IMG/VR virus record: IMGVR_UViG_3300042907_001080
Span: 124,001 to 188,000 of that record
Strand: one strand, 5' to 3'
Length of the DNA stretch: 64,000 bases
This document shows positions 31,768 through 47,074 of this stretch, piece by piece (position 1 is the first letter of the stretch; the number at the start of each line of letters is the position of its first letter). Both the position numbers and the translations under genes were made by a program. The notes beneath the pieces are model-generated. The model saw only the letters and a program-made list of their open reading frames with translations. It made no database searches and was not told the DNA's origin.

Positions 31768-32230
31768 TAGCCAATACCTGTTTCATTTCTAATTCTGTTT
31801 TGAACGGACCTTTATATGGATATCGTTCCAGTGTGATTTTTTTTGGACAAAAACTTTTAACCCATCCTTTGTCAAATTTTATACAGTAGTAACCTGCACA
31901 GTATAGACTCTTGGAATCGCTGCTCTTGGTGAATAGCGGCAGTTTCTTACGAATATCAAACATGGCATTGTGAGGTTCGGCACTGGTGGAGTATCCATGA
32001 ACCTCATTAGGTAGAGCTGTGTCGGCTTCCTTGACAATTTTTACTGTGAAAAACTTTTTACCAAACTGACGAGTTAGACTGTCTTTGGTTTCGTAAATTT
32101 TCACACCCGACTCGTTGCTCATAAAAAATCTATTGTCGTCGTCTTTTCTCAGAGTGGCAATCTTCTCACCGTTCTCCTCTACGATCCAAAATTTATTTGC
32201 TATGATAGGTTTAGCATGTATATCTGTCAT
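31754..32230 (-). CDS. Hypothetical protein
   Basis: 158 aa, ATGA-coupled to the RNase H gene. Confidence 0.65.
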   Translation of the reverse strand: MTDIHAKPIIANKFWIVEENGEKIATLRKDDDNRFFMSNESGVKIYETKDSLTRQFGKKFFTVKIVKEADTALPNEVHGYSTSAEPHNAMFDIRKKLPLFTKSSDSKSLYCAGYYCIKFDKGWVKSFCPKKITLERYPYKGPFKTELEMKQVLANVAK

Positions 32231-33213
32231 TGTGTATACCTCGCATTAAGTGGTTCTGCATAACTCTGTGCCTGATCAGCAATCTTTTTCAAGTCCCACA
32301 AATTACAGAACTTGATCAATCTTATACCTACTTGACTCACATTCTTTTGTTCGGCGGTTGCAGTAGAAATGGTATTTGTAATTATTTCTTTGATGTTATC
32401 TGGCTGATGACTTAGATCAATCAGTCGACGATTGCGTTCATAATCTTCTAAGACTCTATGTTCTTTGCCTTCGTGATCGGACCATCTCTGTAACATGAGA
32501 TTGTTCCACGCAAATCCTTTGCTTTTACGATCTTCGAACGCTTCACTAAGACCCACTTTTTTGCTTGTGCCTTTAGTACGCACACCTGGATACGCTGAGA
32601 AGACATTATCACTGGTATCACCACGCATGCATTTTTCGAACAACAGCCATTCTGGGTTAGGTGCAGGCTTAGGCTCTTGTGTTTTTTTGTCAATGATGGG
32701 CTTGCCTTTGTCATCAAAAATTCCTTTGTCAGTGATAACATGTTCCATAACACCATTGTATTGTGTGACATTGGGTGCAATCAATTGAACGAAGTCTGTG
32801 TCTGTGCTGATGATCACATGTTTGTCATTTGGATGTGTTTGTATCCACCCTGCAATTAAATCATCAGCTTCTAGTTGCGGATTTTGCAAAACAGTGCAGT
32901 TAGTCTTTTCTGCAATAAATTCTTTGAACGTGTCAAATGCTTCCCAGAAGATTTTGTCTTCTTCTTGTTCTTTTTCTGTGTGTGCGGCACGAGCATCTGA
33001 ACGATTACGCTTGTAAGGAGCATAGTAGTCCTTGCGCCACGATCTACCCTCTAAACAGAAGATAACATGACTACCTTCGAACTGCTGCCATGCTTTGCGA
33101 ATACTGTTTAATGTGATGTGAAATGCCATGCCTAGTTTGATATCAGCGTCACCGTTGATAACGTGACGAGCACGAAAGAATGTGTTTGCTGTATCAACTA
33201 AGATATAATTCAT
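32227..33213 (-). CDS. rnh: T4-type RNase H / 5'-3' (flap) exonuclease
   Basis: FEN/PIN acidic motifs 'ILVD', 'WRKDYY..YK.NR', 'LEADDLIA', 'ISTDTDF.QL', 'GDTSDNV...PGV', 'YERNRRLIDL'. Confidence 0.9.
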   Translation of the reverse strand: MNYILVDTANTFFRARHVINGDADIKLGMAFHITLNSIRKAWQQFEGSHVIFCLEGRSWRKDYYAPYKRNRSDARAAHTEKEQEEDKIFWEAFDTFKEFIAEKTNCTVLQNPQLEADDLIAGWIQTHPNDKHVIISTDTDFVQLIAPNVTQYNGVMEHVITDKGIFDDKGKPIIDKKTQEPKPAPNPEWLLFEKCMRGDTSDNVFSAYPGVRTKGTSKKVGLSEAFEDRKSKGFAWNNLMLQRWSDHEGKEHRVLEDYERNRRLIDLSHQPDNIKEIITNTISTATAEQKNVSQVGIRLIKFCNLWDLKKIADQAQSYAEPLNARYTQ

Positions 33214-33653
33214 AGATTATCTTTCTTCACTGTTTTAATATCAATTACGCCTGTGTTTACAGGACCGCCGAAATCGCCATCGACTACTACATTGGCACAC
33301 AGTTCACGGAACCAACGATCTATAATTTCTTCGTCTTTGTCTCCGTCCTCACCATATCCCTCTTGCTTTAATTTTAACACAAAAAGGTCGTTCCAGTCAA
33401 GCTCAAAAAAGCCATTACGAACATTATCTTTGTTGACATGTGTTTCGATTACGCCTACCCACGGTTCTTTTTTACGTGTTGCACGTTCTTTTGGAGATAA
33501 TTTGGCCTGTGCCTCTGCTTCTGTAGCACGTTCGGCAGCTTCAGTGGCTGCTTTGGCTGTTTCAGAGGCTTGTGCTGCAATGCCTATTGATCGTTCTGCT
33601 TCTGCTCTGATCTTGTCAATACCAAATAATTTTTCAATCCATTTATTCATCAT
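33210..33653 (-). CDS. Hypothetical phage protein
   Basis: 147 aa, ATGA overlaps at both ends. Confidence 0.65.
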   Translation of the reverse strand: MMNKWIEKLFGIDKIRAEAERSIGIAAQASETAKAATEAAERATEAEAQAKLSPKERATRKKEPWVGVIETHVNKDNVRNGFFELDWNDLFVLKLKQEGYGEDGDKDEEIIDRWFRELCANVVVDGDFGGPVNTGVIDIKTVKKDNL

Positions 33654-34504
33654 GTTCCCCATTCATTTTTAAACAATGGCACCTGCAATCTGTCTGAATA
33701 TCTCAGTCCATGTTTCATTGCCAGTTCTGCTACTCTGCGGTTATTTAGTGTGTATACACTTTCAACCCCGCCCACAGGCATGAGATAAACATTACCAGTG
33801 AAACCTTCTGCACGATAGATATCCACAGCTTCTAGAGCTTCTTCTGCATCACCTTCAGTGGCCACTACTAATTTGAGATATACATGACCAGCTTCTTGAT
33901 ATTCACAGACTATGTCTGGGCGTATAGCTTCACTAGGCTGTTCTCCTGAACAACTGAGTTTGGCACTGACCGAGAATGTAACTTCTCTACTGGCAAAAGG
34001 AGGATTCTGTGCCCATTCTTGTAGATATTTTTTAAACTCCGGAGTTAGCTTTTGAGTACCGTTGGTTTCAAAAGTAATTTCTTTAAGACCTGTCATACTC
34101 AGATGATTCAACAGATCCGGATAAGCACGTTGCCAACCTAACAACGGTTCACCGCCAGTGATAACCAAGTGTTCATCTTCCCAACGCTTGTAAGGTAATA
34201 TTTCCATGATGCGTTCTGCAATCGCATCAGTTGTTAGCATGGGCGAAAGATCTTTGAATCTAGGATCCCAGCTGGCATAGCTATCACAACCTGTGCTTAC
34301 TAATGGTAAGTCTTGATATTTAAAAAACTTCTTAATATCGGCCGCAATAAAATCACGCTCCTTGCTTTGTTCACCACGTGACATACCAAAGCCGTCACAA
34401 GTAAAGTTACATCCAAACGTGCGTAAGAACACACTAGGGACACCCATATATCGGCCTTCGCCTTGTATGCTGTAAAAAAGTTCTGCTATTTTTATTTTGC
34501 TCAT
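33650..34504 (-). CDS. queE: 7-carboxy-7-deazaguanine synthase (radical SAM)
   Basis: 'ELFYSIQGEG...G.PSVFLRTFGCN', 'GCDS', 'VITGGEPLL', 'FETNGT', 'SAKL', 'YLMP', 'RLQV.L'; lies near folE, queD-like and dpdA. Confidence 0.9.
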   Translation of the reverse strand: MSKIKIAELFYSIQGEGRYMGVPSVFLRTFGCNFTCDGFGMSRGEQSKERDFIAADIKKFFKYQDLPLVSTGCDSYASWDPRFKDLSPMLTTDAIAERIMEILPYKRWEDEHLVITGGEPLLGWQRAYPDLLNHLSMTGLKEITFETNGTQKLTPEFKKYLQEWAQNPPFASREVTFSVSAKLSCSGEQPSEAIRPDIVCEYQEAGHVYLKLVVATEGDAEEALEAVDIYRAEGFTGNVYLMPVGGVESVYTLNNRRVAELAMKHGLRYSDRLQVPLFKNEWGT

Positions 34505-34509
34505 AGTTT

Positions 34510-34538
34510 ATTATACACTCTTTTTTTGTAATTGCCAA
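34510..34538 (-). promoter_or_regulatory. Sigma70-type promoter for queE (probably leaderless)
   Basis: TTGGCA-17 nt-TATAAT; ATG is 5 nt after the -10 box. Confidence 0.65.
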
Positions 34539-34675
34539 GAGCCATTGCCCTGATCTAGCCATTCTAATGTGTCGCCTTCGCCCCAACCTTGCAGATCCAA
34601 TACTTCCTGTGGTATTGGCATAATGAGATCACCAGTATCGGGATCTTCTTCAAGAGTAACTGTCCATCGAGTCAT
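34511..34675 (-). CDS. Small AbrB/MazE-like (swapped-hairpin) protein, 54 aa, absent from the ORF track
   Basis: MTRWTVTLEEDPDTGDLIMPIPQEVLDLQGWGEGDTLEWLDQGNGSWQLQKKSV; 'L..P.P.E.L...GW.EGD.LEW' pattern; ATGA overlap. Confidence 0.7.
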   Translation of the reverse strand: MTRWTVTLEEDPDTGDLIMPIPQEVLDLQGWGEGDTLEWLDQGNGSWQLQKKSV

Positions 34676-34854
34676 GTTATCATTCCTGGTTGTGATCTAC
34701 GCTTACGACATTCTTGTTTTACTTCATTAGGAACATCAGGATGCCATTCGGATATACTGCAATCGTATACCTTATATTCTGGCACGTCTACTTGAGAAAG
34801 AAAGAGAATCCAAAGCACACAGGCAACAACAAACCCAATGATGTATTTCTTCAT
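34672..34854 (-). CDS. Small membrane-anchored protein
   Basis: N-terminal hydrophobic helix followed by 'YDCSISEWHPDVP..VKQECRK'. Confidence 0.6.
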   Translation of the reverse strand: MKKYIIGFVVACVLWILFLSQVDVPEYKVYDCSISEWHPDVPNEVKQECRKRRSQPGMIT

Positions 34855-35057
34855 ATTCTGTCGCTTAACAATATTTTGCACAGCATGGCATCATGTTCGT
34901 GATAAAATTTAAATGTCATTTGATCTGTTTCTGGATGACTAGTGTATCGATCGCCTGGCAAGCCAAAGTGTTCCAACACCATGGCACAGGTTTCATTCCA
35001 CCAAAATCCAGTTTGTTCTTTTTTCCAAGGAACTAAAATTGTTTTTAGATCAGACAC
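34851..35057 (-). CDS. Hypothetical protein
   Basis: 68 aa, GTG start. Confidence 0.55.
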   Translation of the reverse strand: MSDLKTILVPWKKEQTGFWWNETCAMVLEHFGLPGDRYTSHPETDQMTFKFYHEHDAMLCKILLSDRI

Positions 35058-35067
35058 AATATCTCAC

Positions 35068-35445
35068 TCATTTTTTATAATTACCTTTTTCTGGAATAAC
35101 ATGTCTGACACCGCCTGTGGGGTCTTCCATGTCACCTTTGCGTCGAGGAATCAAATGAACATGTGGATACGGCACAGTCTGTCCAGCAGCTTCGCCCCAA
35201 TTAAGGCCAATATTGAATCCATCCCACTCACCATTTTTAACCTTTGCCTGCCCTACTCTCAGAGCATCAGCAAAACAATCTTCAATAACTCCCACAGCTG
35301 AATATTTAGGCACAAACAACAAGTGACCGTCTGTTACAGGATACTTGTCTTTAAAAACAACCACATGAAAGTCGTCTTGTACAACATCGTTCCATGGTGC
35401 CTGCCCTGCATCACGTGCATCGTCTAACGAATAATGTAAGTTCAT
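35068..35445 (-). CDS. HIT family nucleotide hydrolase
   Basis: 'DKYPVTDGHLLFVPK', 'GFNIGLNWGEAAGQTVPYPHVHLIPRRKGD'. Confidence 0.9.
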   Translation of the reverse strand: MNLHYSLDDARDAGQAPWNDVVQDDFHVVVFKDKYPVTDGHLLFVPKYSAVGVIEDCFADALRVGQAKVKNGEWDGFNIGLNWGEAAGQTVPYPHVHLIPRRKGDMEDPTGGVRHVIPEKGNYKK

Positions 35446-35669
35446 CGTTTATATTCCTTTCTTTCTGTAGGTAGGTCATCTTCTCGTACAACAAACTCAC
35501 GGCCGCCTAGACTGCCTGCAAATGCTTTAGTGCGTTCCATATAAACTAATCGTAGTTTAAGAGTTTGAAATGCAACATCTAAAAATGCCTTGGGCTTATA
35601 ACCTAGAACATGCATATCAAAATCTTTACCTGCGTCAGTGCAATGAACTTTAATCTTAGAATCGATCAT
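35442..35669 (-). CDS. Hypothetical protein
   Basis: 75 aa, ATGA overlaps. Confidence 0.55.
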   Translation of the reverse strand: MIDSKIKVHCTDAGKDFDMHVLGYKPKAFLDVAFQTLKLRLVYMERTKAFAGSLGGREFVVREDDLPTERKEYKR

Positions 35670-36205
35670 TTTGTCCACCAATCTTCCCAAGGAAAATCAA
35701 TCCATACATCCTTCTCTGCCTTGTTAACTTCCATGCCAACGAAATCCATCTTAACATTGCACTTGCTGGCGAGATTATCTACTAACACAGCAAATTTAAC
35801 ATTGTTATTCCACACTTCTTCCCAGGCTGGATCATCTGGAAAGCAACCACTTGGCCAATCTTTCATGATCCAGTTAAGTGTGGTGCCTTGATCGTTGATA
35901 TCATCTACAATTAAAATGTTTTTAAAAGCAGTATCGCTATCAACTGCACGATCCTTGGACAACGGTCCTAGAGCATCTTCAGCCATCCATAAATTACTCT
36001 CCGGACCAATCTCACTATCTCGTAGACTTACATTGAGAGTATGTAACGGAATATTAAAATATTGACTGATCATAACAGCAGGAATCAATCCCCCTCGAGT
36101 AATTCCTACAATATAATCGGGCCTCCACGTTCCTATAGCAAGCTCTCTACAAATCTTGCCGACTAGTCCGGTTACTTCATGCTGGTTGATTTTGAGTTTG
36201 TTCAT
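35666..36205 (-). CDS. Type I phosphoribosyltransferase (Gpt/Hpt-like purine PRTase)
   Basis: 'VGITRGGLIPA', PRPP loop 'ILIVDDINDQGTT', C-terminal 'WIDFPWE'. Confidence 0.85.
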   Translation of the reverse strand: MNKLKINQHEVTGLVGKICRELAIGTWRPDYIVGITRGGLIPAVMISQYFNIPLHTLNVSLRDSEIGPESNLWMAEDALGPLSKDRAVDSDTAFKNILIVDDINDQGTTLNWIMKDWPSGCFPDDPAWEEVWNNNVKFAVLVDNLASKCNVKMDFVGMEVNKAEKDVWIDFPWEDWWTK

Positions 36206-36644
36206 TTCTATCCTTGAGATATTGTTCGTGTTGTATCCATTTGTTGTTGACTAAAAATCCCCATTCACGTTTATGCGGGCCAGGCATGAATAGGGTCCAA
36301 GCAGTTATTCCAGGTTGAAGTTCGATGCGATGATAGCTATTAGAACCACAAATACGGAAGTGACCAGGACCCCGCCAATGCTTGGTCTCTCCAATCATTT
36401 GGCCATTTTCGAAATTAGGAGTATATTCATAGTATCCACCTTTTAGTATCAGTGTAGCATAGGGCCACGGATGATCATGAACATCGTCAGGATCACCTTT
36501 GAGGAATTTATGTAAAAATACGTTGAATGGAAAACGATCTCTTTCTTTCAAGAAGAGATAATACCGTTCGAGATACGGTTCGTTATTAACACGATCATAA
36601 ATGATACGCTTGCGGCCCAGTCGTTCAAGCAGTTTCAAAAACAT
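36177..36644 (-). CDS. Cupin-fold protein
   Basis: 'HDHPW....IL.GGY.E' and 'YHRIEL' metal-binding cupin motifs. Confidence 0.75.
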   Translation of the reverse strand: MFLKLLERLGRKRIIYDRVNNEPYLERYYLFLKERDRFPFNVFLHKFLKGDPDDVHDHPWPYATLILKGGYYEYTPNFENGQMIGETKHWRGPGHFRICGSNSYHRIELQPGITAWTLFMPGPHKREWGFLVNNKWIQHEQYLKDRNEQTQNQPA

Positions 36645-37044
36645 TATTAACTTCTTCCTTGAGATATCTTATCAGTTCTTTATCTGTGGGCGATACACTA
36701 TAATTGTTCTTGTAAAAAATCTCATAGCTGTCGCTGCCGTATTTTCCAATGCCATATAACATTGTAGCATCATTTCCGTCCCAAGTCAAATAGTCTTGAC
36801 TCATTCTAATCAATCGAGTATAACGAACATTAACCATTCCGAGTGGTTGGATTATGCTTTTGACAAACTCTTCGTCTGCTTGTAGCAATGCCAGTGCTGT
36901 AGGAAACCAATATAGAAATTCTGGCAGAGTGGTCTTCACAGCTTTGCGACCAGTTTGATTTAACATAATTACCCCAACAAAATGCTGCCAAGCATTGTCA
37001 ACTTGTTGTTGCACCATTAGATCGTCACGTAGAGGTTTAATCAT
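36625..37044 (-). CDS. MBD4-like HhH-GPD DNA glycosylase
   Basis: 'W...V..IMLNQT', 'FPT', 'IQPLGM', HhH 'LYGIGKYGSDSYEIF' and catalytic-Asp region 'PTDKEL..YL', paralleling the MBD4 glycosylase domain. Confidence 0.8.
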   Translation of the reverse strand: MIKPLRDDLMVQQQVDNAWQHFVGVIMLNQTGRKAVKTTLPEFLYWFPTALALLQADEEFVKSIIQPLGMVNVRYTRLIRMSQDYLTWDGNDATMLYGIGKYGSDSYEIFYKNNYSVSPTDKELIRYLKEEVNNVFETA

Positions 37045-37259
37045 TCTACATCCTCGTCAAACCATTCATCAACTTGACGTTCTGCTTCTTCTCGGGTCAT
37101 TGCATGAACAAAGATTCTAGCAGGTTCTCCGACAGTGTGCTGAATATTAAACTTTATCACACCAGCGGGGATAAGATTCCAATCTCGTTCTACAACAAAC
37201 TCTTGTAGATGCTTCATTCTGTGTATTAAATTATCTGTAAGATCTTTGGCTGTGTTCAT
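37041..37259 (-). CDS. Hypothetical protein
   Basis: 72 aa from the ATGA-overlapping start. Confidence 0.55.
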   Translation of the reverse strand: MNTAKDLTDNLIHRMKHLQEFVVERDWNLIPAGVIKFNIQHTVGEPARIFVHAMTREEAERQVDEWFDEDVE

Positions 37260-37450
37260 TGCTGTCCCCGAACTATATTCTTGTTCTCTGTTTCGGCATC
37301 TTGACGCAGTTGATCTTCCATCCACAACATTTTTTGATGTTGATACATTTCTTCTGAAAGTCCATGCCATCCACAGCATTTACCAGTCGGGCTTCGGCCG
37401 CATCCGCATTTACCAAATTCTTCTGCATTTTCTTTAACTCTTATTTGCAT
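37256..37450 (-). CDS. CDGSH-type iron-sulfur/zinc-finger-like small protein
   Basis: '[15 protein letters not shown]' follows the C-x-C-x2-S...C-x-G-x-H pattern. Confidence 0.6.
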
Positions 37451-37458
37451 AATATTCC

Positions 37459-37944
37459 TTAAGTTGGGAAGGGCCACGCTTTACTTGGCTCTGGTCGAGT
37501 TTTTAATTTTACATTCTCTTCAATAACGTCACCTGTTATTTCATCACACAGGTCAACTTGATACGGTGCAATGATATGCACTGCACAATCTTCTTCTGAC
37601 CAATCATGTTCGCCGTCATAGAGCCAACCTGCACCACCTTCGTAGTAGAGTTCTTTGAGTTCTTGTTGCTCTAATTCGCTAATGTCATCACTGAATTCCC
37701 ACTCAACACTGACACTGTCGTCAAACTCACAACCCCAACCACAATCGGTTCGAGCATAGGCAACAGGATCACCTTCCCAGGGAAGATTGCAATCTAAATC
37801 ACCTTCAACAAAGCCTTGTCCCCAACGATAGGTTTCGTCAATGTTAAACCAACTGATGCTATCATCTGGATTCTTACGATACATTTCTACATGGTAGACA
37901 ATGCTTTTCTTTTCCAGTGGTTTGATTACATATACTTGACTCAT
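37459..37944 (-). CDS. Hypothetical acidic protein
   Basis: 161 aa, Trp/Glu/Asp-rich. Confidence 0.6.
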   Translation of the reverse strand: MSQVYVIKPLEKKSIVYHVEMYRKNPDDSISWFNIDETYRWGQGFVEGDLDCNLPWEGDPVAYARTDCGWGCEFDDSVSVEWEFSDDISELEQQELKELYYEGGAGWLYDGEHDWSEEDCAVHIIAPYQVDLCDEITGDVIEENVKLKTRPEPSKAWPFPT

Positions 37945-38118
37945 TTAAATTCCCTTGTAAGCATCAAGAATAAGAGCACCGCCAATTGTAAATCCTACAA
38001 TAGCAAGTCCGTAGTTACCGTTAACTAACGCACTCAATCCAGATAGTAAGTTTAGTCCGCCGATTGTAAGGCTAATTTCTTTTCTGTTACGGCCAACCCA
38101 TATAAAAAATTTATCCAT
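37945..38118 (-). CDS. Small membrane protein (57 aa), absent from the ORF track
   Basis: MDKFFIWVGRNRKEISLTIGGLNLLSGLSALVNGNYGLAIVGFTIGGALILDAYKGI; SD AAGGA; abuts both neighbours. Confidence 0.6.
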   Translation of the reverse strand: MDKFFIWVGRNRKEISLTIGGLNLLSGLSALVNGNYGLAIVGFTIGGALILDAYKGI

Positions 38119-38231
38119 TATATTTCCTTAATAAAGTATTTTGATGCAGGGTATTGCACCTGCAACCACTCTAACAAGCCCGCTTCAACTGGTAAGCGAA
38201 CGCTATCAAACTTGTTAGTAATGTATCTCAT
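38118..38231 (-). CDS. Microprotein (37 aa), absent from the ORF track
   Basis: MRYITNKFDSVRLPVEAGLLEWLQVQYPASKYFIKEI; ATGA overlap with the folE stop and TAATG overlap downstream. Confidence 0.55.
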   Translation of the reverse strand: MRYITNKFDSVRLPVEAGLLEWLQVQYPASKYFIKEI

Positions 38232-38974
38232 CGTGGCGAAAATTCTTGCTGCATTTTAATATTGTCAAAGAATTCTTTCTTTGTTCCTGGATCATCTTTA
38301 AATGCACCTTTGAGTACAGTGGTCTGTGTTAGACTCGAATGCGCCATAATGCCACGATTCTCACAGCAACCGTGAGTGGCTTGTATGTATACTCCGATGT
38401 TTTCACTATCTGTAGCTCGACTTATTTCTCTTGCAATATCATTGCAGAGTTCTTCCTGGAGAGTGCCACGCCTAGCGCACCACTGAGCAATACGAGTATA
38501 CTTGCTAAGGCCAATAAGTTTGTTGGCAGCAATGATACCAATATAAGCCACCCCAGATACAGGCTGGTGATGATGACTACACATACTACGCAATTCACTT
38601 CTAACAACCAACATTCCTTCATATCTATCCTCACTATCATTCGGAAACGCTGTTGCATCTGGAGCAGGGTCGTATCTACCTGACATGATTTCATTAAAAT
38701 ACATTTTAGCAAGTCTACGTGCTGTGCCTTTACTGTTGGGATCATTTTCACGATCAATAAGCAAACTGTCTAGCACTTGTTCAAATGCAGGAGTTGCTTC
38801 GTCAATTAATTTTTCTAAGTCGCCGTCATGCAGATAATCACTGATGTTGTCACCGGCCCAGAAACGCTTGCCTTCACGTTTCATCTTAAAACGAATGTGA
38901 TCACCTAGATATGCTTCTTTATATCCGCCATCGCCTGCCATTGCGTCCAGGCCTGTTTCTGTTTTATTTGTCAA
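38228..38974 (-). CDS. folE: GTP cyclohydrolase I
   Basis: 'TARRLAKMY', 'SMCSHH', 'IGLSKY.RI', 'LQEEL', 'ATHGC...RG'; TTG start with SD GGAG. Confidence 0.93.
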   Translation of the reverse strand: MTNKTETGLDAMAGDGGYKEAYLGDHIRFKMKREGKRFWAGDNISDYLHDGDLEKLIDEATPAFEQVLDSLLIDRENDPNSKGTARRLAKMYFNEIMSGRYDPAPDATAFPNDSEDRYEGMLVVRSELRSMCSHHHQPVSGVAYIGIIAANKLIGLSKYTRIAQWCARRGTLQEELCNDIAREISRATDSENIGVYIQATHGCCENRGIMAHSSLTQTTVLKGAFKDDPGTKKEFFDNIKMQQEFSPR

Positions 38975-39013
38975 TTTATTCTCCGAGTTAATGACGTGGA
39001 TGTCATATAATAG

Positions 39014-40078
39014 TTATTTTAACATCTCTAATAGTTTATTACAACTAAAAAAGTTTTCTTGTAGTATAGCTACCTGTTTATTTAGGCTAGGCAGTCGAGT
39101 TTCGTAATTATCCATATGCTGGATTATTTCTCTACAAATATCTGGACGATATACAGTATATGCATCGTAGCTCTCAGTCCATTTGCTAGGATACTTAAAT
39201 GTATCTAAAGCCATTTCACTATAGCTGAGTCTATCAGGAACCATAGGAATGGCACCTACAATAGCACCTTCATACCAACTGATGCCTAGGGTTTCTTGCA
39301 GGTTTGCACTAAACACCAATTTGGCTTCGCCTAGCAAATTATGATATTCGTTTTTTGTTAGTTGTTGATCTTGACAGACGACAAATTCATATTGCGGTAA
39401 GTGTTCTTTCAAGTCACGAAAGATTTCAACCTGTTTCTCTGGAGCGATACGATGCGGGAACAAGATAAGATCACGTTTAGTCATGTTTTTATACATTGTT
39501 AACGTGTCCTCCATATACTCCATAGGCCAACCTGTGCGCACAATCTTAGTATCATATAGTTTTTTTGCTGGAGTAAATCCTAACAAATTTTCACAAAACA
39601 TGTCAATATGAAACTGTGTAGCAAAGTAGTTGTGATCAAACGCATGATAGAAACTTTGTTCAGCATTTCTAACCCAGGGTTTATTTCCTACAAGGCGTCC
39701 TAAGAAGTCTTGCGGATCATATGAGCCAGCATGCCAAAGACCATGTGTAGTTACTGGAATTCCCAGTAGCTCACTCATATACTTTAAATTTATGATACCA
39801 GGATGCCAAGCATCAGTAAAGATAAAGTGATCGCCGGGATGAATGGATCCGTTACAAAATAACCTACCCATTTGTTCAATTTGACTAGCCTTGTAGATAT
39901 TCGTGCCGCCAAAGTTGAGAAATGCTCCAGGAGTGGTAGCACTAGGAATGTCCGTAGGACCTGATATAATGTTGACATGGTGCCCTGCTTTTTTAAGGAT
40001 TGCCGGCACGTGAGTTTTCCACTGACCCGTATATCTAGTCTCTACTGCTTCAAGATCAATGAGAAAAACTCGTGCCAT
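39014..40078 (-). CDS. GT-B (GT4-like) glycosyltransferase within the deazaguanine locus
   Basis: C-terminal 'FPHRIAPEKQ', E-x7-E motif 'QETLGISWYEG', 'VPDRLSYSE'. Confidence 0.8.
   Translation of the reverse strand: MARVFLIDLEAVETRYTGQWKTHVPAILKKAGHHVNIISGPTDIPSATTPGAFLNFGGTNIYKASQIEQMGRLFCNGSIHPGDHFIFTDAWHPGIINLKYMSELLGIPVTTHGLWHAGSYDPQDFLGRLVGNKPWVRNAEQSFYHAFDHNYFATQFHIDMFCENLLGFTPAKKLYDTKIVRTGWPMEYMEDTLTMYKNMTKRDLILFPHRIAPEKQVEIFRDLKEHLPQYEFVVCQDQQLTKNEYHNLLGEAKLVFSANLQETLGISWYEGAIVGAIPMVPDRLSYSEMALDTFKYPSKWTESYDAYTVYRPDICREIIQHMDNYETRLPSLNKQVAILQENFFSCNKLLEMLK
39016..39044 (-). promoter_or_regulatory. Possible sigma70-type promoter for folE
   Basis: TTGTAA-17 nt-TAAAAT. Confidence 0.4.
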
Positions 40079-40081
40079 TAA

Positions 40082-40306
40082 TTAACCTCTTTTTTGAAAG
40101 TGTGGTCTGTTGCCTTGATATGGACGTCTTGGCCGTTTGCTGGCAAGATAGGATCCATAGTTTTGACTATCCCTGCGATAGAGATCTGCAGGATTAAAAT
40201 CGCAGAGTTGAAATCTGCACCAATCGTGGTAGGCCTCGAGGTCCTCCCACACCTTTACAACGTCAGGACGATTTTCAAAGTACCTGTAGTCCTTGTAGTT
40301 TTTCAT
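40082..40306 (-). CDS. Hypothetical protein
   Basis: 74 aa, SD AAGGA. Confidence 0.6.
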   Translation of the reverse strand: MKNYKDYRYFENRPDVVKVWEDLEAYHDWCRFQLCDFNPADLYRRDSQNYGSYLASKRPRRPYQGNRPHFQKRG

Positions 40307-40317
40307 CGATGTTCCTT

Positions 40318-40707
40318 TTAGTATTTGATGAATGAACCATTTTCTCCGTCTTCGGAGACCTCAATCCAAATCTCGCGACCTGGATACTTTTTGCTAATGA
40401 CGTCATATAAGTCGCCTGACATCATTTCACAACTCTTATAATCTAAACTTAGTGTAGCATCTTTGTAGAGATTTAGCAACCATCGTTTAAACTGAATAAA
40501 CTCAATATCACGATCATCGTGTGTAACGCCAATCCAAACTTTGAAGTGAAAGATGTGACGATGCGGATAACCTAGAAAACTTACATCATATTCATCACCT
40601 GTAGCAAGTGCTGGGTCTGTAAGTGCAGCTGGATATTTGTGCATACCTTCTTTCTGAAAGGTAACCCAAATCATTTTGTTAGGTCTAACGTCTTGTCGAA
40701 TGTTCAT
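40318..40707 (-). CDS. queD: QueD/PTPS-like T-fold protein (probable 6-carboxytetrahydropterin synthase)
   Basis: 'EGMH', 'HRH.FHF', 'RDIEF..FK', 'SCEM', 'VSEDGENG' are consistent with the PTPS/QueD fold; context next to folE. Confidence 0.65.
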   Translation of the reverse strand: MNIRQDVRPNKMIWVTFQKEGMHKYPAALTDPALATGDEYDVSFLGYPHRHIFHFKVWIGVTHDDRDIEFIQFKRWLLNLYKDATLSLDYKSCEMMSGDLYDVISKKYPGREIWIEVSEDGENGSFIKY

Positions 40708-41078
40708 CTTAGTTGTTCCATGGTTATAATTTTAGATAATTCTTCACCGAGATCTTTATCTTCAGTGACCACATGTAGACTGTGTCGATTCTCATCGTTC
40801 TTTCGGTCATACTTGGTAGTTTCAATGATAGTACCGCCACTAGCGCCATAGACATTTAGTCGAAAACCTTGTGATGCAATGTTTGGGCCTTCGCTGTCAA
40901 CTGAAATAAGCTGATTACTGTAATCTTCTTCGTCGTTCATTAGCCAGTTGCGAATTTTTTGTTTAAATGTTAATTTCATAGGTTTCTTTTCTACTACACT
41001 TCTTGCACGATTAATTTTATTAGCACCGCGGATTCTTGGAACCTTTGTCACCGATGCTACTGCGTAGCCACCACTCAT
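40704..41078 (-). CDS. Hypothetical protein
   Basis: 124 aa, ATGA-coupled. Confidence 0.6.
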   Translation of the reverse strand: MSGGYAVASVTKVPRIRGANKINRARSVVEKKPMKLTFKQKIRNWLMNDEEDYSNQLISVDSEGPNIASQGFRLNVYGASGGTIIETTKYDRKNDENRHSLHVVTEDKDLGEELSKIITMEQLR

Positions 41079-41608
41079 TTGATAATCTCATCTTTACCAT
41101 ATTGATCCCAACTAGTAAACTTATTTCTATCTAGTAGGTCATGGAGGTTATGGCACCACACTCCGTGATTAGTTGCTTTAAAGTCTTTGTCATCAATTTT
41201 CAGCGTAGCGTTATAGCCTAGTTGATTAATATAAGGTAATTTTACACTAATCTGCGGAATAAATCTACGCTTTTCGGTAAGACCACTTTCAAGCAATCCT
41301 TCCGTTTCACGAACATCAAAGTCTAAGGTACACCAAAATTCGTCCTCTGCATCTAAGCAGACATAGATCATATCTTCCCAAGGACGCCATGTTTCTGTAT
41401 CGTTAACACCATTAGTCTTAAAACTTTGATTAGCACCAAAGTAAATATGTTTGCACCTGTTGTTACGAGCCAATTCCATAATAATATATGGATCATGCAC
41501 ACCTACAACAAACAGTGTTTTCATTCCGTAGGCAGGAGTATGTTCAATCTCTACGCCGGTGAAGAAGGTAATGCTATCAGCAACACCTGAATCGTAATTT
41601 CTTTTCAT
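41075..41608 (-). CDS. Hypothetical enzyme-like protein in the dpd locus
   Basis: 177 aa alpha/beta pattern ('FFTGVEIEHTPAYGMKTLFVVG', 'HIYFGANQSF'). Confidence 0.65.
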   Translation of the reverse strand: MKRNYDSGVADSITFFTGVEIEHTPAYGMKTLFVVGVHDPYIIMELARNNRCKHIYFGANQSFKTNGVNDTETWRPWEDMIYVCLDAEDEFWCTLDFDVRETEGLLESGLTEKRRFIPQISVKLPYINQLGYNATLKIDDKDFKATNHGVWCHNLHDLLDRNKFTSWDQYGKDEIIK

Positions 41609-41751
41609 TTTTTAAATAAATTTTGAATTGATCGGATTAGATTAAGAAATCGAAAATGATAGTCGGTTAAGAATGGAGTTCGATGCGGACAACGACCTTG
41701 TTGCCAATCACAGTTAACTGTGATTTCTTGCCTGCATGTGTCGCATTTCAT
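41605..41751 (-). CDS. Cys-rich microprotein (48 aa), absent from the ORF track
   Basis: MKCDTCRQEITVNCDWQQGRCPHRTPFLTDYHFRFLNLIRSIQNLFKK; ATGA overlaps at both ends. Confidence 0.6.
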   Translation of the reverse strand: MKCDTCRQEITVNCDWQQGRCPHRTPFLTDYHFRFLNLIRSIQNLFKK

Positions 41752-41975
41752 AGTTCTAGTCCATTTCTTCTTGCTTCTTGTTCTGCCTGCGCTTCTTGCA
41801 TCACTGCTTCGTGCTTGTGTTTAAGTATAACAATATCATCCTTTAAACGCAACCTTTGTTTCTTCAATTCTTCTATTTTTAGGTCATCAAAGATACCAGT
41901 TTTTTCCATACTGTCTATCTGTTTGTCCAAAGCACGGTGAGCTTCTTCTAGATGCTTGATTCTATTTTGATACAT
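41748..41975 (-). CDS. DUF465/YdcH-like coiled-coil protein
   Basis: 'L...H..LD..I........DD..I..LKK.RL.LKD.I' pattern. Confidence 0.7.
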   Translation of the reverse strand: MYQNRIKHLEEAHRALDKQIDSMEKTGIFDDLKIEELKKQRLRLKDDIVILKHKHEAVMQEAQAEQEARRNGLEL

Positions 41976-41984
41976 ATCAACTCC

Positions 41985-43595: not shown

Positions 43596-44333
43596 TTAAG
43601 CAGCCTGTGCTGGGATAATATATTTGTAAGTTGCTAGTCCGCTATCTAGAGTGATCTGAATAGCACCTTCATTGCTCAACGACATCTTAGCAGTGTTGGT
43701 ATCTGAAATCTTAAGTATGCTCAAGATCGGAGCAACTGGCCAAGTCCAACCGCGATCTAATTTGCCTGCAACATTCTGTGCAAACACAAACTCACCACCG
43801 TGTGTTGATGCATCACCGAATGTAAATTTAAGATTACCGCCTTCAGTTTTAGCAAGGAATGTGGGATGCTCTGAGTTAGCACCTGCTTGAAAGTTAAAAC
43901 GAATCACAGAAGTCACTGATGGTTCGATTTCAACATCCCACTTAACACCACGAAACTTCACAGTCTTCATCTTTTCATTGATGATTTCTTGATTCATGAA
44001 GCGATAGTCGTTCTTGAAGTCGCCGTCTTTGTTTTCAAAGTGTAGACCTACTGGCAAAGTTTCGCCATTGCGTTCTGCTGTGGTGATACTGATCTTTGCA
44101 CCTTCTTTGTATTCTGCACCTTCCAACAGATATTTCAACTTGTTCAGTTGCGGCATGCCAAACACACCAATCATATCTGGATACGGATTAGCAGTTTCTG
44201 CTTCCATGATCACTGAACGGTCATCTGCCATTGAGTTAATAGTTGTGCCTTTGTCTGTGCCTGTGACTTTAACTGTGGTCAAGAAGCCGAGGTTCTGTGT
44301 GTGGCTAACGATGTCTTGTAAAATATCTTTCAT
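43596..44333 (-). CDS. Putative DNA sliding clamp (gp45/PCNA-like)
   Basis: 245 aa two-domain beta-alpha pattern ending 'GAIQITLDSGLATYKYIIPA'; directly downstream of the polymerase; clamp loader is in the window. Confidence 0.7.
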   Translation of the reverse strand: MKDILQDIVSHTQNLGFLTTVKVTGTDKGTTINSMADDRSVIMEAETANPYPDMIGVFGMPQLNKLKYLLEGAEYKEGAKISITTAERNGETLPVGLHFENKDGDFKNDYRFMNQEIINEKMKTVKFRGVKWDVEIEPSVTSVIRFNFQAGANSEHPTFLAKTEGGNLKFTFGDASTHGGEFVFAQNVAGKLDRGWTWPVAPILSILKISDTNTAKMSLSNEGAIQITLDSGLATYKYIIPAQAA

Positions 44334-44356
44334 TAAGAATTCTCCTGTATATTAAG

Positions 44357-44385
44357 ATTATATTTAGATCTTGAGAAAAAATCAA
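44357..44385 (-). promoter_or_regulatory. Sigma70-type promoter with overlapping late TAAATA, upstream of clamp-dpdA
   Basis: TTGATT-17 nt-TATAAT; TAAATA at 44361-44366. Confidence 0.6.
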
Positions 44386-44393
44386 CCTAGAAA

Positions 44394-47063
44394 TCACTCA
44401 AAATCAAACAGTTTGTTAAATGTATTATCCGACCTTGTTGAACTGATGTCCCATTCCAAAACACCAATAAGGTTTCCTAACTTCTCATCTATCACAGTGG
44501 TTTCCATTTCTGCATCGTTGAAAGGAAGATCCTTGAACCACTGCGGCAATCTCAGTTCATCCACAGGATAGGCCACGGAAGTATGCCCCATAGGATTGTC
44601 TTTGATCTTGCATACAATTACTTTCATGCCATCTACAATCTGCATGGAGTATTTGTCATCCATCATACGCCGGAGAGTGTTCCAATTCAATGAAGCTCTA
44701 ACATGCCCGGGCATGTTAGTCTTGCCTGCTTTTTTTTCTTTGGCAGCGTATTCTGTGATATTGTTGGCTCGCTTAGGCGAGCCCTTTTCCCAACCCGGTC
44801 GAGTTTTAAATTCTGTGCGAAAATCAGTGATATATTGCAGGATCTCTTCTTTGGTCACACCAGTTAGTGTCTTAGTCAGCACCTCACTCAAGAAGTCTTG
44901 TATAACAACCGGGGTATCTGAACGCTTGAGATCAAGCCCCATCGCTTTAATTTTTCCTGGTTTGCCTTCTGTGTCTGCTCGTTTGCCTTCTTTGTCGTAG
45001 TAGAGAACTGCGTATCGCTTTTTGGTGATGAACAGTCCTTTGCTTGCAACAATTTCGCGACCTGCTTTGATGACCTCGGCTCTGGTTCGAGGGACATGAA
45101 ATGCGTCCTGCATGAATTTGACAAATGTGCCATTGACCGTATCTCCTATGGTATCGTAAAGTTCGACCACTGATTCTCTGTTCCAGGGAATCAGTCCCTT
45201 CTCAATGTCTTTTTTCAAGGTAGTATACGCTGAAAAATAACAAGAGTCTGTGTCACCGTAGATTACTGCTCGACCGATGTGATCATACTCTCCAGTGATA
45301 ATTTCGTTTACTTTTGATGCCATGTGTTTGGCAATTTGTCTTCCGGTGAGAGTTGTGGACTGTCCAATTCTGTTATCAAAGAATCTACAGCCTGGATTTA
45401 AAATTGCACCATACAGACTGTTTAGTAGAATCTTCTTGACCAACTGTCGCTTGTCCCAGTATTCTTCTTCAATCTTGTTGCCGGCCTGGATACATTCTCG
45501 CAGTTTGGCCTGCATTTCTTTACGTTCTTTATACCAACGTGCTAGCAGTCCGGATATAACACCCTCAGTTTCATATGTGAATATAGTGCCGTTGGCTGAG
45601 ATCATCCAAGGTTGATTGCTGTCAAATATAAGATCATAGGCCTGAGCCGCACTTAGCGTATCCGAGCCGCCACCTTCCCAATCGACAGTGACTTCACGAC
45701 CCACTTCTCGATTCATCACAGCGGAATATTCAAGACTACCAAATATGCCTTCCCAAGCGGACGCAAATGATTTTCCTTTTGACATTTCTGCTGCAATAAA
45801 ATCCTTGGTCCCATCCTGTCTCAACTGACCTACGATGGTTTCAGGACCCATATTCAAAGCCCGAATAGCACTAGGATACAGTGAGTTAATATCTAGCGAG
45901 CCGATCCACTCATGTATACCTTTCTTGGGATATGCAACGTAGGCACCAGCAGCTTGAGTGTCTCCGTGCTCTTCCATTTTTTTGCGATTAGGAACTATCA
46001 TACCTCTGCGATGAGCTTCGTTGATGATAGCTTGTTCAGTCACAGCCACTGCACCCATAGTAGTTGCTAACAGCACTGTGTTTTCGTGTGCAATTGTATT
46101 GGCTAAGTCAATAAATTTCAGTTTCTTATCTAGATCATCTAACAGTTTACAATCGTTGATATTGTATTCAACGAATGTTTTAAAATCGTTGTTGTATAAT
46201 TGATCCAATGTGCCTTCATACTGAGTCTTTCTCTGACCTAGTTCATATTCGGCAATAGCATCTAATCGATAGGTGTGACGTTCTTCATAGGTATACTTGC
46301 GATAAAGTTCAAGACTGTCTATATGCACACGGCCAATGAAGTCATATGTAGTGGCAGTTTTACCGAACTTTTCATATTCTCGTTTCTTAGGCAAACAATT
46401 CCATAGACAAAAACGTTTGGTATCTTCTTTACTGAGAACCTTGGTAACACGATTAACAGTATATGGAATATCAAAGCCTTCCGAGTTCCAACCACTCAGC
46501 ACATCAGCATCTTGTATGAGATCCAAGAATGTGTTTAGCATGTCTGCTTCGTTGTCAAACAGCATGGTATTGGGAAATTCTTCAACCTGCTTGGTGGCTT
46601 CTGCCATGCTGAGTGTTTTGGGAGGTATGGCTAGACACACCATGGTCTCCATCCATTGTAGGTAGACAGCAATCGCAGTAATTGGCATGAACGCATCATC
46701 TGGTGATGCATAGCCACGTTCTGGATCAAAGTCTACCTCAATATCGAAAAACGCTACATTTAGCTTAGGTGCATCTTGATTGAGATAATTGTCTTCTAAA
46801 CAACGATATATGGGATTAATATCGCTTTCGTGAAGTTTTTTGTTTGAATGTATGGCAAGTTCTTTGCGATGTTCTTTGACATTCTTTGAACTTACACGGC
46901 TAAGAGGTTCACGCTTAATGGATTGGAACTTGCCTTTGGGGTCGTTGTAATAGAATATATGTCTGGCAGGATAGTCTTTGAAATGCCTCTGCCCTTTGTC
47001 GTCACGCTCAACAACACGTATCATGTCATCGTCGCGATCGTAGTATGCGTCCACGAAACTCAT
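44394..47063 (-). CDS. Family B DNA polymerase (gp43-like)
   Basis: ExoI 'FFDIEV', ExoII 'GWNSEGFDIPY', ExoIII 'YNINDC'; polymerase motifs 'LDINSLYPS', 'KILLNSLYG', 'YGDTDS', 'KKRYA'. Confidence 0.97.
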   Translation of the reverse strand: MSFVDAYYDRDDDMIRVVERDDKGQRHFKDYPARHIFYYNDPKGKFQSIKREPLSRVSSKNVKEHRKELAIHSNKKLHESDINPIYRCLEDNYLNQDAPKLNVAFFDIEVDFDPERGYASPDDAFMPITAIAVYLQWMETMVCLAIPPKTLSMAEATKQVEEFPNTMLFDNEADMLNTFLDLIQDADVLSGWNSEGFDIPYTVNRVTKVLSKEDTKRFCLWNCLPKKREYEKFGKTATTYDFIGRVHIDSLELYRKYTYEERHTYRLDAIAEYELGQRKTQYEGTLDQLYNNDFKTFVEYNINDCKLLDDLDKKLKFIDLANTIAHENTVLLATTMGAVAVTEQAIINEAHRRGMIVPNRKKMEEHGDTQAAGAYVAYPKKGIHEWIGSLDINSLYPSAIRALNMGPETIVGQLRQDGTKDFIAAEMSKGKSFASAWEGIFGSLEYSAVMNREVGREVTVDWEGGGSDTLSAAQAYDLIFDSNQPWMISANGTIFTYETEGVISGLLARWYKERKEMQAKLRECIQAGNKIEEEYWDKRQLVKKILLNSLYGAILNPGCRFFDNRIGQSTTLTGRQIAKHMASKVNEIITGEYDHIGRAVIYGDTDSCYFSAYTTLKKDIEKGLIPWNRESVVELYDTIGDTVNGTFVKFMQDAFHVPRTRAEVIKAGREIVASKGLFITKKRYAVLYYDKEGKRADTEGKPGKIKAMGLDLKRSDTPVVIQDFLSEVLTKTLTGVTKEEILQYITDFRTEFKTRPGWEKGSPKRANNITEYAAKEKKAGKTNMPGHVRASLNWNTLRRMMDDKYSMQIVDGMKVIVCKIKDNPMGHTSVAYPVDELRLPQWFKDLPFNDAEMETTVIDEKLGNLIGVLEWDISSTRSDNTFNKLFDFE

Positions 47064-47074
47064 TTTTTCTCCTA

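What the first reader, a model, noticed from the sequence alone, without database searches (positions are those of the whole stretch)
36625..37044. Stand-alone MBD4-like DNA glycosylase beside the base-modification genes
Seen: a 139-aa minimal HhH-GPD domain with LYGIGKYGSDSYEIF and PTDKEL, closer in pattern to eukaryotic MBD4 than to Nth/MutY (no Fe-S Cys motif). Established: MBD4 excises T/U opposite G. Inference: it repairs mismatches opposite modified G, processes DpdA intermediates, or discriminates unmodified host DNA.
Basis: partly seen in the sequence, partly recalled or inferred. Interest (0 to 1): 0.6.

Follow-up and report, generated by a model that had tools for sequence, protein, structure and literature searches.

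The report
Phage stand-alone MBD4-type DNA glycosylase
A large uncultured aquatic phage carries a real, intact 139-residue copy of the DNA-repair domain known from animal and plant MBD4; it most likely removes mispaired T or U opposite G, and it is an optional repair gene rather than a working part of the neighbouring 7-deazaguanine genes.

Summary
The ORF at 36625-37044 (-) is real. It is an MBD4-type HhH-GPD glycosylase domain: Pfam HhH-GPD is above cut-off, and a family profile scores 3e-36 against MBD4 but only 1e-12 against EndoIII/MIG. The AF2 model has pLDDT 94 and TM 0.85-0.87 to MBD4 over the full length. The catalytic Asp, the Gln and Tyr that bind the flipped pyrimidine, and the Tyr at the position of the lyase Lys are all conserved. 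There are no cysteines, so no Fe-S cluster.

The link to deazaguanine does not hold. Neither the 281-kb genome nor a 98%-complete relative has a TGT/DpdA. The gene occupies at least five different slots in a variable PolB-to-FEN stretch. Only 7 of 28 well-flanked related loci sampled by QueE carry it. Close homologues also sit in phages without any Que genes.

Elsewhere it lies beside Fpg/Nei (three separate clades), DNA ligase, Dam or replication genes. In the whole Xp12 clade it opens the 5-methylcytosine operon.

Best reading: a monofunctional G:T/G:U mismatch glycosylase used for phage base excision repair. It is a new, uncharacterised phage branch of a known family, of moderate interest.

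The parts
36625..37044 (-). Gene for the 139-aa stand-alone MBD4-type HhH-GPD DNA glycosylase (protein P0001)
   Evidence: ORF and translation. Pfam HhH-GPD above cut-off. MBD4 is the best PDB match by sequence, profile and fold. AF2 pLDDT 94.1.
37003..37017 (-). Codons for M10-V11-Q12-Q13-Q14. V11/Q12 match MBD4 V448/Q449, the backbone NH and Gln side chain that bind the flipped T/U/5hmU.
   Evidence: Alignment to MBD4. Residue roles from PMC3479182, where Q449A is inactive. The motif is [hydrophobic]-Q-[E/Q] across all phage clades. MAFFT slips by one residue in the QQQ run.
36943..36963 (-). Codons for L28-N29-Q30-T31-G32-R33-K34, the minor-groove wedge loop (MBD4 466-472). N29 is invariant. 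The MBD4 Arg468 position is Gln, and the Gly471 position is Arg.
   Evidence: Position 468 also varies in eukaryotic homologues (K/R/C/V/Q). Position 471 is Gly in eukaryotes but Arg/Trp/Tyr in the phage clades.
36730..36759 (-). Codons for L96-YGIGKYGSD-105, the helix-hairpin-helix hairpin. Y102 matches MBD4 Y540; by my own recollection of EndoIII K120, this is the place of the lyase Lys of bifunctional HhH enzymes.
   Evidence: G98, G100, Y102 and D105 are invariant in 28 diverse homologues and in 177 family members.
36682..36684 (-). Codon for D121, the counterpart of the catalytic Asp560 of MBD4
   Evidence: Aligned. Invariant. Role from PMC3479182.
37041..37379 (-). Upstream ORF of 112 aa with no family match. 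Its stop overlaps the glycosylase start by 4 nt.
   Evidence: no Pfam or PHROG hit. Present in 69 of 80 close loci.
36177..36644 (-). Downstream gene of 155 aa (phrog_4786, labelled 'cysteine dioxygenase'). Its start overlaps the glycosylase 3' end by 20 nt.
   Evidence: Context only, not shown to work with the glycosylase.
35666..36205 (-). Phosphoribosyltransferase gene, next in the same-strand run
   Evidence: Pfam Pribosyltran 1.9e-13. Context only.
33650..34504 (-). QueE-like radical-SAM gene (7-deazaguanine precursor pathway)
   Evidence: phrog_2076 at 6.6e-54 and Radical_SAM. Context only.
38228..38974 (-). GTP cyclohydrolase I (FolE) gene
   Evidence: Pfam 1e-38. Context only.
32227..33213 (-). 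Flap endonuclease / 5'-3' exonuclease gene. It is the direct neighbour of the glycosylase in several relatives.
   Evidence: Pfam 5_3_exonuc_N 1.1e-19. Gene orders of L120, L122, L128 and L145.
44394..47063 (-). Family-B DNA polymerase gene, the other end of the variable stretch in which the glycosylase moves
   Evidence: Pfam DNA_pol_B 1.5e-34. In L116 the glycosylase lies one gene (c47, 180 aa) after PolB; L190 and L212, from loci without the lineage's markers, place it two genes after PolB.

Best explanation
The gene most likely encodes a monofunctional, cluster-less HhH-GPD glycosylase of the MBD4 type. It would flip a pyrimidine out of duplex DNA into a pocket made by V11/Q12, Y102 and D121, and cut the glycosidic bond of T, U or a 5-substituted U mispaired with G. 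That is the product of deamination of C, 5mC or 5hmC. The resulting abasic site would then be handled by an AP endonuclease, probably the host's, and by the phage's own polymerase, flap endonuclease and ligase.

In this phage lineage it is an optional repair gene within the replication and nucleotide-metabolism region. The lineage has no UDG-family enzyme of its own.

Shown here: family, fold and conserved catalytic and base-binding residues; sporadic and mobile gene distribution; repeated pairing with other repair genes elsewhere. Inferred: the actual substrate and the benefit to the phage.
For: Family and fold.

Residues: D121 (= D560), Y102 (= Y540), N29 and G69 are invariant across 177 family members, and the Q449-equivalent Gln is present in every clade. 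The roles of these residues are documented in PMC3479182.

Monofunctional: Tyr, not Lys, sits in the HhH hairpin.

Repair context: Fpg/Nei lies within 1-4 genes of the homologue in L194, L203, L321 and L323/L324, which belong to three separate clades of the tree. An ATP-dependent DNA ligase lies two genes away in L084. FEN is the direct neighbour in L120/L122/L128/L145, and PolB lies one to two genes away in L116/L190/L212.

Xp12 clade: the gene is the first of the conserved run glycosylase, MazG-like PRA-PH, dCMP-methylating TS homologue, dCMP deaminase. From my own knowledge, this mirrors the linkage of vsr with dcm and of Mig with M.MthTI. Cyanophage S-TIM54 has the glycosylase and a C5-cytosine DNA methylase.

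The window lineage has no UDG-superfamily gene.

MBD4 reads the orphan G through N1/N2 via backbone carbonyls, so a C7-modified guanine opposite would not be expected to block it. This last point is inference.
Against: There is no biochemical data for any phage member.

The window lineage shows no route to 5mC or 5hmC: no C5 methylase, no ThyA-family enzyme and no dCMP deaminase. The special need for G:T repair seen in Xp12 therefore does not obviously apply here.

The pocket residue Gly471 of MBD4 is Arg here, and Trp or Tyr in other phage clades. H561/K562 are K/E. Specificity may therefore differ from MBD4.

The Arg468 wedge is Gln, though this position also varies in eukaryotic homologues.

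No clear phage AP endonuclease was found.

Spontaneous deamination is slow relative to a lytic cycle, so the selective benefit is not self-evident.
Confidence: 0.6

Rival explanations
1. Modification-aware policing enzyme. In phages whose DNA carries a fully substituted base, the glycosylase excises the canonical or unfinished pyrimidine (C, U, T or 5hmU). It would do this either to clear wrongly incorporated bases from phage DNA or to damage unmodified host DNA. The bulky residue at the MBD4 Gly471 position would act as a gate against the phage's own modified base.
For: The gene lies within three genes of base-modification enzymes in three separate clades. These are FolE/QueE/PRT here, the 5mC operon in the Xp12 clade, and a 5-hmdU DNA kinase, TS homologue or DNA alpha-glucosyltransferase in L105-L107 and L163-L164. 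The pocket position 471 differs systematically between eukaryotes (Gly) and phages (Arg/Trp/Tyr). The MBD4 pocket can hold cytosine (PMC3479182).
Against: Many homologues sit in phages with no visible modification genes within 6-8 kb. The residues that bind a uracil-type ring are all kept. Modification genes and repair genes share the same genome module anyway, so adjacency is weak evidence. In the window lineage the modified base would be a purine, which this pocket is not built for.
Confidence: 0.15
2. One reading: a dedicated partner of the 7-deazaguanine system. It would repair mismatches specifically opposite deazaguanine, process DpdA base-exchange intermediates, or tell deazaG-DNA from host DNA.
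For: It is translationally coupled to the phrog_4786 gene and followed by the phosphoribosyltransferase gene, within the same-strand run that also holds FolE and QueE. This synteny is kept in about 80 close relatives and in L086 at 54% identity.
Against: The lineage has no TGT/DpdA. The gene's position within the stretch is not fixed. Only 25% of well-flanked QueE-sampled loci have it. Homologues occur in phages without Que genes. MBD4-type recognition of the orphan G does not touch position 7.
Confidence: 0.07
3. General uracil-DNA glycosylase substitute or counter-measure. The enzyme would mainly remove U from phage DNA whatever the partner base, covering for the missing UDG or countering host cytosine deamination of phage DNA.
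For: There is no UDG-family gene in six records of the lineage. From my own knowledge, MBD4 excises U as well as T, and PMC3479182 shows thymine and 5hmU held in the same pocket. The gene is accessory, as expected for an arms-race or niche gene.
Against: MBD4-type enzymes depend on the mismatched G, and the loop residues that pack against it are conserved (N29, L68, G69). No host deaminase defence is known for these uncultured hosts.
Confidence: 0.13

Closest known systems
Glycosylase domain of eukaryotic MBD4 / plant MBD4L (PDB 4e9e, 4evv, 1ngn, 6vjw)
   Same: Same length and fold: TM 0.85-0.87 in both directions and 31-33% identity. Same cluster-less HhH-GPD core. Same catalytic Asp, the same Gln and Tyr for the flipped pyrimidine, and the same Asn/Leu/Gly wedge-loop residues.
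   Different: No methyl-CpG-binding domain and no linker: the phage protein is the bare domain. Arg468 is Gln, Gly471 is Arg, and His561/Lys562 are Lys/Glu. It is encoded by a phage, and in the tree it falls in a stand-alone aquatic clade apart from most eukaryotic sequences.
Uncharacterised homologue of Xanthomonas phage Xp12 (QNN97216.1) and its clade
   Same: Same family, with 26% identity over 92% of the length and the same GKY..DS and D-x-x-L-x-x-Y motifs. Also a phage-borne stand-alone protein.
   Different: The Xp12-clade gene heads the conserved 5-methyl-dCMP operon, which contains a MazG-like PRA-PH, a TS homologue and a dCMP deaminase. It carries an N-terminal extension and has Trp at the Gly471 position. 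The window gene has no such partners.
Mig.MthI / thermostable thymine-DNA glycosylase (PDB 1kea) and EndoIII/MutY
   Same: Same HhH-GPD superfamily. Mig has the same presumed G:T/G:U substrate class.
   Different: Far weaker match: profile E 8e-12 to 1e-5 against 3e-36 for MBD4, and TM 0.62-0.74. Those enzymes are about 80 residues longer and carry a 4Cys Fe-S cluster, whereas the phage protein has no cysteine.
Host defence HhH glycosylases Dag1/Dag2 that attack 7-deazaguanine phage DNA (bioRxiv 10.1101/2025.10.29.685425)
   Same: HhH-superfamily glycosylases in the phage-host conflict over deazaguanine DNA.
   Different: Those are bacterial, integron-borne and purine-directed, and Dag1 appears bifunctional. 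The window protein is phage-encoded, of the MBD4 pyrimidine type, and lacks a lyase Lys.

Membership tests
MBD4-type glycosylase domain (branch of HhH-GPD) | HhH-GPD fold with a helix-hairpin-helix and a downstream catalytic Asp | tested here: met
   Pfam PF00730 at 33.8 bits, above 26.2. AF2 pLDDT 94 and TM 0.85-0.87 to MBD4. D121 aligns to D560 and is invariant.
MBD4-type glycosylase domain (branch of HhH-GPD) | Clearly closer to MBD4 than to any other HhH-GPD branch | tested here: met
   Profile E 3e-36 (127 bits) for MBD4, against 1e-12 for EndoIII, 8e-12 for MIG and 1e-5 for MutY. Eukaryotic MBD4/MBD4L proteins appear among the best 150 of 1.84 billion representatives.
MBD4-type glycosylase domain (branch of HhH-GPD) | Gln449 and Tyr540 contacts to the flipped uracil-type base (Q449A is inactive) | tested here: met
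   Q12 and Y102. Y is invariant and the [hydrophobic]-Q-[E/Q] motif is present in all clades. Roles from PMC3479182.
MBD4-type glycosylase domain (branch of HhH-GPD) | No Fe-S cluster, and no lyase Lys in the hairpin (monofunctional) | tested here: met
   Zero cysteines in 139 residues. The hairpin reads GIGKYG, with Tyr at the Lys position.
MBD4-type glycosylase domain (branch of HhH-GPD) | Arg468 wedge filling the gap left by the flipped base | tested here: not met
   It is Gln30 here and Leu/Cys in relatives. The position is also K/R/C/V/Q among eukaryotic homologues, so it is not family-defining.
MBD4-type glycosylase domain (branch of HhH-GPD) | Excision of T/U/5hmU opposite G | not testable with these tools
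   Needs an enzyme assay.
MBD4 protein proper (methyl-CpG-binding domain protein 4) | N-terminal methyl-CpG-binding domain joined to the glycosylase domain | tested here: not met
   The protein is 139 aa and is all glycosylase domain. The automatic JGI name 'methyl-CpG-binding domain protein 4' is therefore a misnomer for the phage proteins.
DpdA-type 7-deazaguanine DNA modification system | A TGT-family transglycosylase (DpdA) in the same genome | tested here: not met
   PF01702 finds nothing in the 281-kb record, in a 98%-complete 353-kb relative, or in three further relatives, while all 14 control genomes score.
DpdA-type 7-deazaguanine DNA modification system | Co-inheritance of the glycosylase with the deazaguanine genes | tested here: not met
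   17 of 80 QueE-sampled loci carry it, and 7 of 28 with enough flank. Homologues occur without Que genes.
Nth / MutY / Mig branch | C-terminal Cys-X6-Cys-X2-Cys-X5-Cys iron-sulfur loop | tested here: not met
   No cysteine in the sequence. NCBIfam nth and mutY models score 18-21 bits against cut-offs of 212-287.

The most novel reading that the evidence does not exclude
Phage MBD4-type glycosylases are tuned to the phage's own non-canonical DNA. The bulky Arg/Trp/Tyr at the Gly471 pocket position would shut out the phage's modified pyrimidine, so the enzyme cuts only the canonical or unfinished base. This would let the phage police its own substituted genome or wreck unmodified host DNA. Under this reading the recurrent placement beside 5mC, 5hmU-kinase, glucosyltransferase and deazaguanine genes reflects function rather than shared module.
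Probability: 0.12. Interest if true: 0.75.

Novelty: new member of a known kind. Interest (0 to 1): 0.4.

Why it matters
The MBD4 glycosylase domain is usually treated as a eukaryotic repair enzyme tied to CpG methylation. Here a bare version of it proves to be common in aquatic phages: 5476 hits to this one protein. About 267 clusters at 50% identity score at the MBD4 level, with stand-alone viral and eukaryotic members side by side. By contrast, a motif-based scan of 185,579 prokaryote species genomes found it on only ten contigs, all metagenome- or single-cell-derived.

This gives a set of small natural G:T/G:U-type glycosylases with varied pocket residues for enzymology and sequencing tools. 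In the Xp12 clade it offers a testable phage parallel to the vsr-dcm logic, in which a genome made wholly of 5mC carries its own T:G repair enzyme.

For this window it also corrects the picture. The deazaguanine genes work without DpdA, and the glycosylase is not one of their parts.

Tried and rejected
- PHROGs gave no family for the protein.
- Megablast of the region against cultured phages found nothing.
- Literature searches for phage MBD4-like enzymes found no description. These covered MBD4 with bacteriophage, 'MBD4-like' with phage, XP12 with glycosylase, MetaGPA with glycosylase, and deazaguanine with HhH. The papers on glycosylated 5-hydroxycytosine and on diaminopurine were read and are not relevant.
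- A 5mC or 5hmC route in the window lineage was sought and not found: PF00303, PF00145 and PF00383 were all negative.
- A phage BER partner was sought. There is no Fpg and no ExoIII-type enzyme, and only a sub-threshold EndoIV-like hit.
- C-terminal extensions of longer homologues (P0143, P0150, P0158) were tested against the PDB as possible informative fusions, with no match.
- The promoter and terminator scan of the operon gave nothing above shuffled expectation.
- The deep order of the phage and eukaryotic branches could not be resolved: 141 columns, many forks under 80% support, and no outgroup.
- Several representative proteins came from contigs of about 1 kb and gave no context.
- Reads tools, complex prediction and the second fold job were not needed.

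Full report
**Observation**

Its start overlaps the stop of the upstream 112-codon ORF by 4 nt. Its 3' end is overlapped by 20 nt of the next gene (phrog_4786, labelled 'cysteine dioxygenase'), which in turn overlaps a phosphoribosyltransferase gene. The gene is not a chance frame: 5476 homologues were found in metagenomes, and the top 120 are at least 85% identical.

**Family**

- Pfam HhH-GPD is above its curated cut-off.
- Against solved structures, MBD4 glycosylase domains score 7e-18 and MutY 0.1.
- A profile of 28 diverse homologues scores 3e-36 for MBD4, 1e-12 for EndoIII and 8e-12 for MIG.
- The AlphaFold2 model (pLDDT 94.1) matches 16 MBD4 chains at TM 0.82-0.87 over the full length of both proteins, and MutY at 0.66.
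- The protein has no cysteine, so no Fe-S cluster.

**Active site**

Residue roles come from PMC3479182.
- The catalytic Asp560 is D121.
- Tyr540 is Y102; by my own recollection of EndoIII, this is the hairpin position where bifunctional HhH enzymes have the lyase Lys.
- Val448/Gln449, which bind O4, N3 and O2 of the flipped T or 5hmU, are V11/Q12. The Q449A mutant of MBD4 is inactive.
- D, Y, N29 and G69 are invariant in 177 family members.

Differences from MBD4: the Arg468 wedge is Gln, but that position is also K/R/C/V/Q among eukaryotic homologues. Pocket residue Gly471 is Arg here, and Trp or Tyr in other phage clades. His561/Lys562 are Lys/Glu.

MBD4 reads the orphan guanine through N1 and N2 with backbone carbonyls. 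By inference, a substituent at C7 of guanine should not interfere.

**The genome**

The window is bases 124001-188000 of a 281,658-bp IMG/VR virus record. It has a family-B polymerase whose nearest cultured relatives are jumbo phages, Sinorhizobium phage Phosso at 50% and Atu_ph07 at 47%.

Present in the genome:
- FolE and QueE in the window.
- QueD and a weak QueC-like frame elsewhere.
- ThyX.

Absent:
- TGT/DpdA, including in a 98%-complete 353-kb relative.
- A ThyA-family enzyme.
- A C5 DNA methylase.
- dCMP deaminase.
- A UDG-family enzyme.
- Fpg.
- An ExoIII-type AP endonuclease.

A recent preprint describes a Vibrio phage with full 7-deazaguanine substitution in which only distant folE, queC and queD homologues, and no dpdA, were reported. 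A DpdA-less route is therefore plausible here, but it is a separate matter from the glycosylase.

**Is the glycosylase part of the deazaguanine module?**

Among 80 close IMG/VR loci the order QueE ... HIT, PRT, phrog_4786 gene, glycosylase ... FolE, glycosyltransferase is kept. It also holds in a misbinned 'archaeal' MAG contig at 54% identity. That is one lineage, however, and three results argue against a functional tie.

1. In marine relatives the gene sits in at least five different slots of the same roughly 12-kb stretch between PolB and FEN. That stretch also carries 2OG-Fe oxygenases, ClpP, an epimerase, an exoribonuclease and a MoxR/VWA pair.
2. I sampled 80 loci by QueE instead of by the glycosylase. 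Only 17 had the glycosylase, and of the 28 loci with at least 6 kb upstream and 3 kb downstream only 7 had it.
3. Homologues of 46-59% identity lie in contigs with none of these genes nearby. Cyanophage S-TIM54 (50% identity) has no FolE or TGT anywhere in its genome.

The distribution is thus independent of the deazaguanine genes in both directions.

**Where else it lives**

- All cultured-phage hits other than S-TIM54 are Xp12-like phages of Xanthomonas and Stenotrophomonas, plus a Janthinobacterium phage.
- In Xp12, which is known to replace C with 5mC (PMC7653180, listed), the gene overlaps the start of a MazG-like PRA-PH gene. That gene is followed by the thymidylate-synthase homologue and the dCMP deaminase.
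- The same run is kept in nine IMG/VR relatives down to 53% identity and in a MAG fragment. It lies 3-5 kb away in a further member.
- S-TIM54 carries a C5-cytosine DNA methylase.
- A freshwater clade places the gene beside DUF6378 and either a 5-hmdU DNA kinase, a TS homologue or a DNA alpha-glucosyltransferase with further glycosyl- and methyltransferases.
- In three other clades of the tree the neighbour is Fpg/Nei (L194, L203, L321, L323/L324).
- Other neighbours are an ATP-dependent DNA ligase, Dam with the clamp loader and RegA, an AEP primase with a UvrD helicase, and Toprim with DnaB.
- One copy lies between cellular transporter genes in a Ca. Actinomarina single-cell contig.

**Size and shape of the family**

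A profile search of 1.84 billion representatives gave 267 clusters at E <= 1e-30, 2459 at 1e-10 and 8363 at 1e-3. The best 150 mix short stand-alone proteins from metagenomes with long proteins that carry the domain at the C-terminus. The long proteins that I looked up are eukaryotic: Acrasis, Chlorokybus and legumes.

A motif-based scan of one genome for each of 185,579 prokaryote species found only ten loci. All are on MAG or single-cell contigs, and at least one (L086) is clearly viral.

In an unrooted tree of 177 domains the window protein falls in a stand-alone aquatic clade (SH-aLRT 94). The Xp12 clade is well supported (99). Most long eukaryotic proteins group elsewhere. The deep order is unresolved.

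**Interpretation**

The conserved chemistry, together with repeated pairing with Fpg/Nei, ligase, FEN and polymerase genes, points to a base-excision repair glycosylase for deaminated cytosines (G:U, G:T, G:5hmU).

- In the Xp12 clade this fits the need created by a genome made of 5mC, because UDG cannot see T. From my own knowledge, this mirrors the linkage of vsr with dcm and of Mig with M.MthTI.
- In the window lineage the likeliest value is as the phage's only uracil/thymine-type glycosylase.
- The recurrent closeness to modification genes of several chemistries, together with the Gly471-to-Arg/Trp/Tyr change, keeps open a more novel role as a modification-aware enzyme. I rate that low without assays.

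**Novelty**

JGI pipelines already label these proteins 'methyl-CpG-binding domain protein 4', which is a misnomer because there is no MBD. I found no paper that describes phage members. I therefore file this as a new, uncharacterised phage branch of a known enzyme kind, of moderate interest.

Noticed in passing
window 33650-40078 (-); G000 221129-221467 and 243294-243632: A 7-deazaguanine precursor gene set without any DpdA/TGT. FolE, QueE, a phosphoribosyltransferase, a HIT protein, a phrog_4786 protein and a family-1-like glycosyltransferase (39014-40078) are syntenic across the lineage. QueD and a weak QueC-like frame lie elsewhere. The set may feed a nucleotide-level route to modified G, as suggested for Vibrio phage VP1, or serve tRNA queuosine supply.
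   Followed up: partly
window about 32200-47100; loci L086, L115, L116, L120, L128, L134, L145: The stretch between PolB and the flap endonuclease is a hot spot of gene turnover. It carries 2OG-Fe(II) oxygenases, ClpP, an NAD epimerase, an Rv2179c-like exoribonuclease and a MoxR AAA plus VWA/metallopeptidase pair in varying order.
   Followed up: partly
L003 5932-8537 (Xp12); L096-L104, L093, L318: The conserved run MBD4-like glycosylase, MazG-like PRA-PH, thymidylate-synthase homologue, dCMP deaminase (plus DHFR) occurs in the whole Xp12-like clade. The glycosylase is annotated only as hypothetical or 'ENDO3c'.
   Followed up: yes
L105/L106/L162 (89-5485), L107 (501-5691), L163, L164: Freshwater viral contigs place the glycosylase at the head of apparent pyrimidine hypermodification clusters. 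These contain DUF6378, an inositol-phosphate-synthase-like protein, an FkbM methyltransferase, a 5-hmdU DNA kinase, a DNA alpha-glucosyltransferase, GT25 and GT10 transferases, and a TS homologue.
   Followed up: partly
L194, L203, L321 (4286-6438), L323 (4648-6540), L324: Fpg/Nei and the MBD4-like gene lie within one to four genes of each other in several unrelated viral contigs, one of them 211 kb long. This looks like a small phage base-excision repair cassette.
   Followed up: partly
L087 8001-8387: A 52%-identical copy lies in a 93.6-kb Ca. Actinomarina single-cell contig, between a CbiM cobalt transporter gene and an EamA transporter gene. This is a cellular setting, yet the copy nests inside a phage clade in the tree, which suggests transfer between phage and host.
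   Followed up: no
L086 (PAOW01000007.1), L085, L084, L088/L089: Contigs filed in MAGs of Methanobacteriota, Neomarinimicrobiota and Rickettsiales. L086 carries T4-like phage genes (PolB, FEN, the whole Que stretch) and looks like a misbinned viral contig. L084, L085 and L088/L089 show only runs of small unannotated ORFs and were not examined further.
   Followed up: no
L161 3151-4368 (-) (cyanophage S-TIM54): S-TIM54 encodes a C5-cytosine DNA methylase about 2 kb from a true-looking ThyA and a flap endonuclease. It is the only cultured phage outside the Xp12-like group with a glycosylase hit.
   Followed up: partly
window 28633-29298 (-); G000 188738-188983; G000 218436-218849: A Methyltransf_24 class-I methyltransferase lies in the window. 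Just outside it is a short PRA-PH/MazG-like frame. Further off, a 361-aa frame gives a sub-threshold EndoIV-family (AP_endonuc_2) hit. None was examined further.
   Followed up: no
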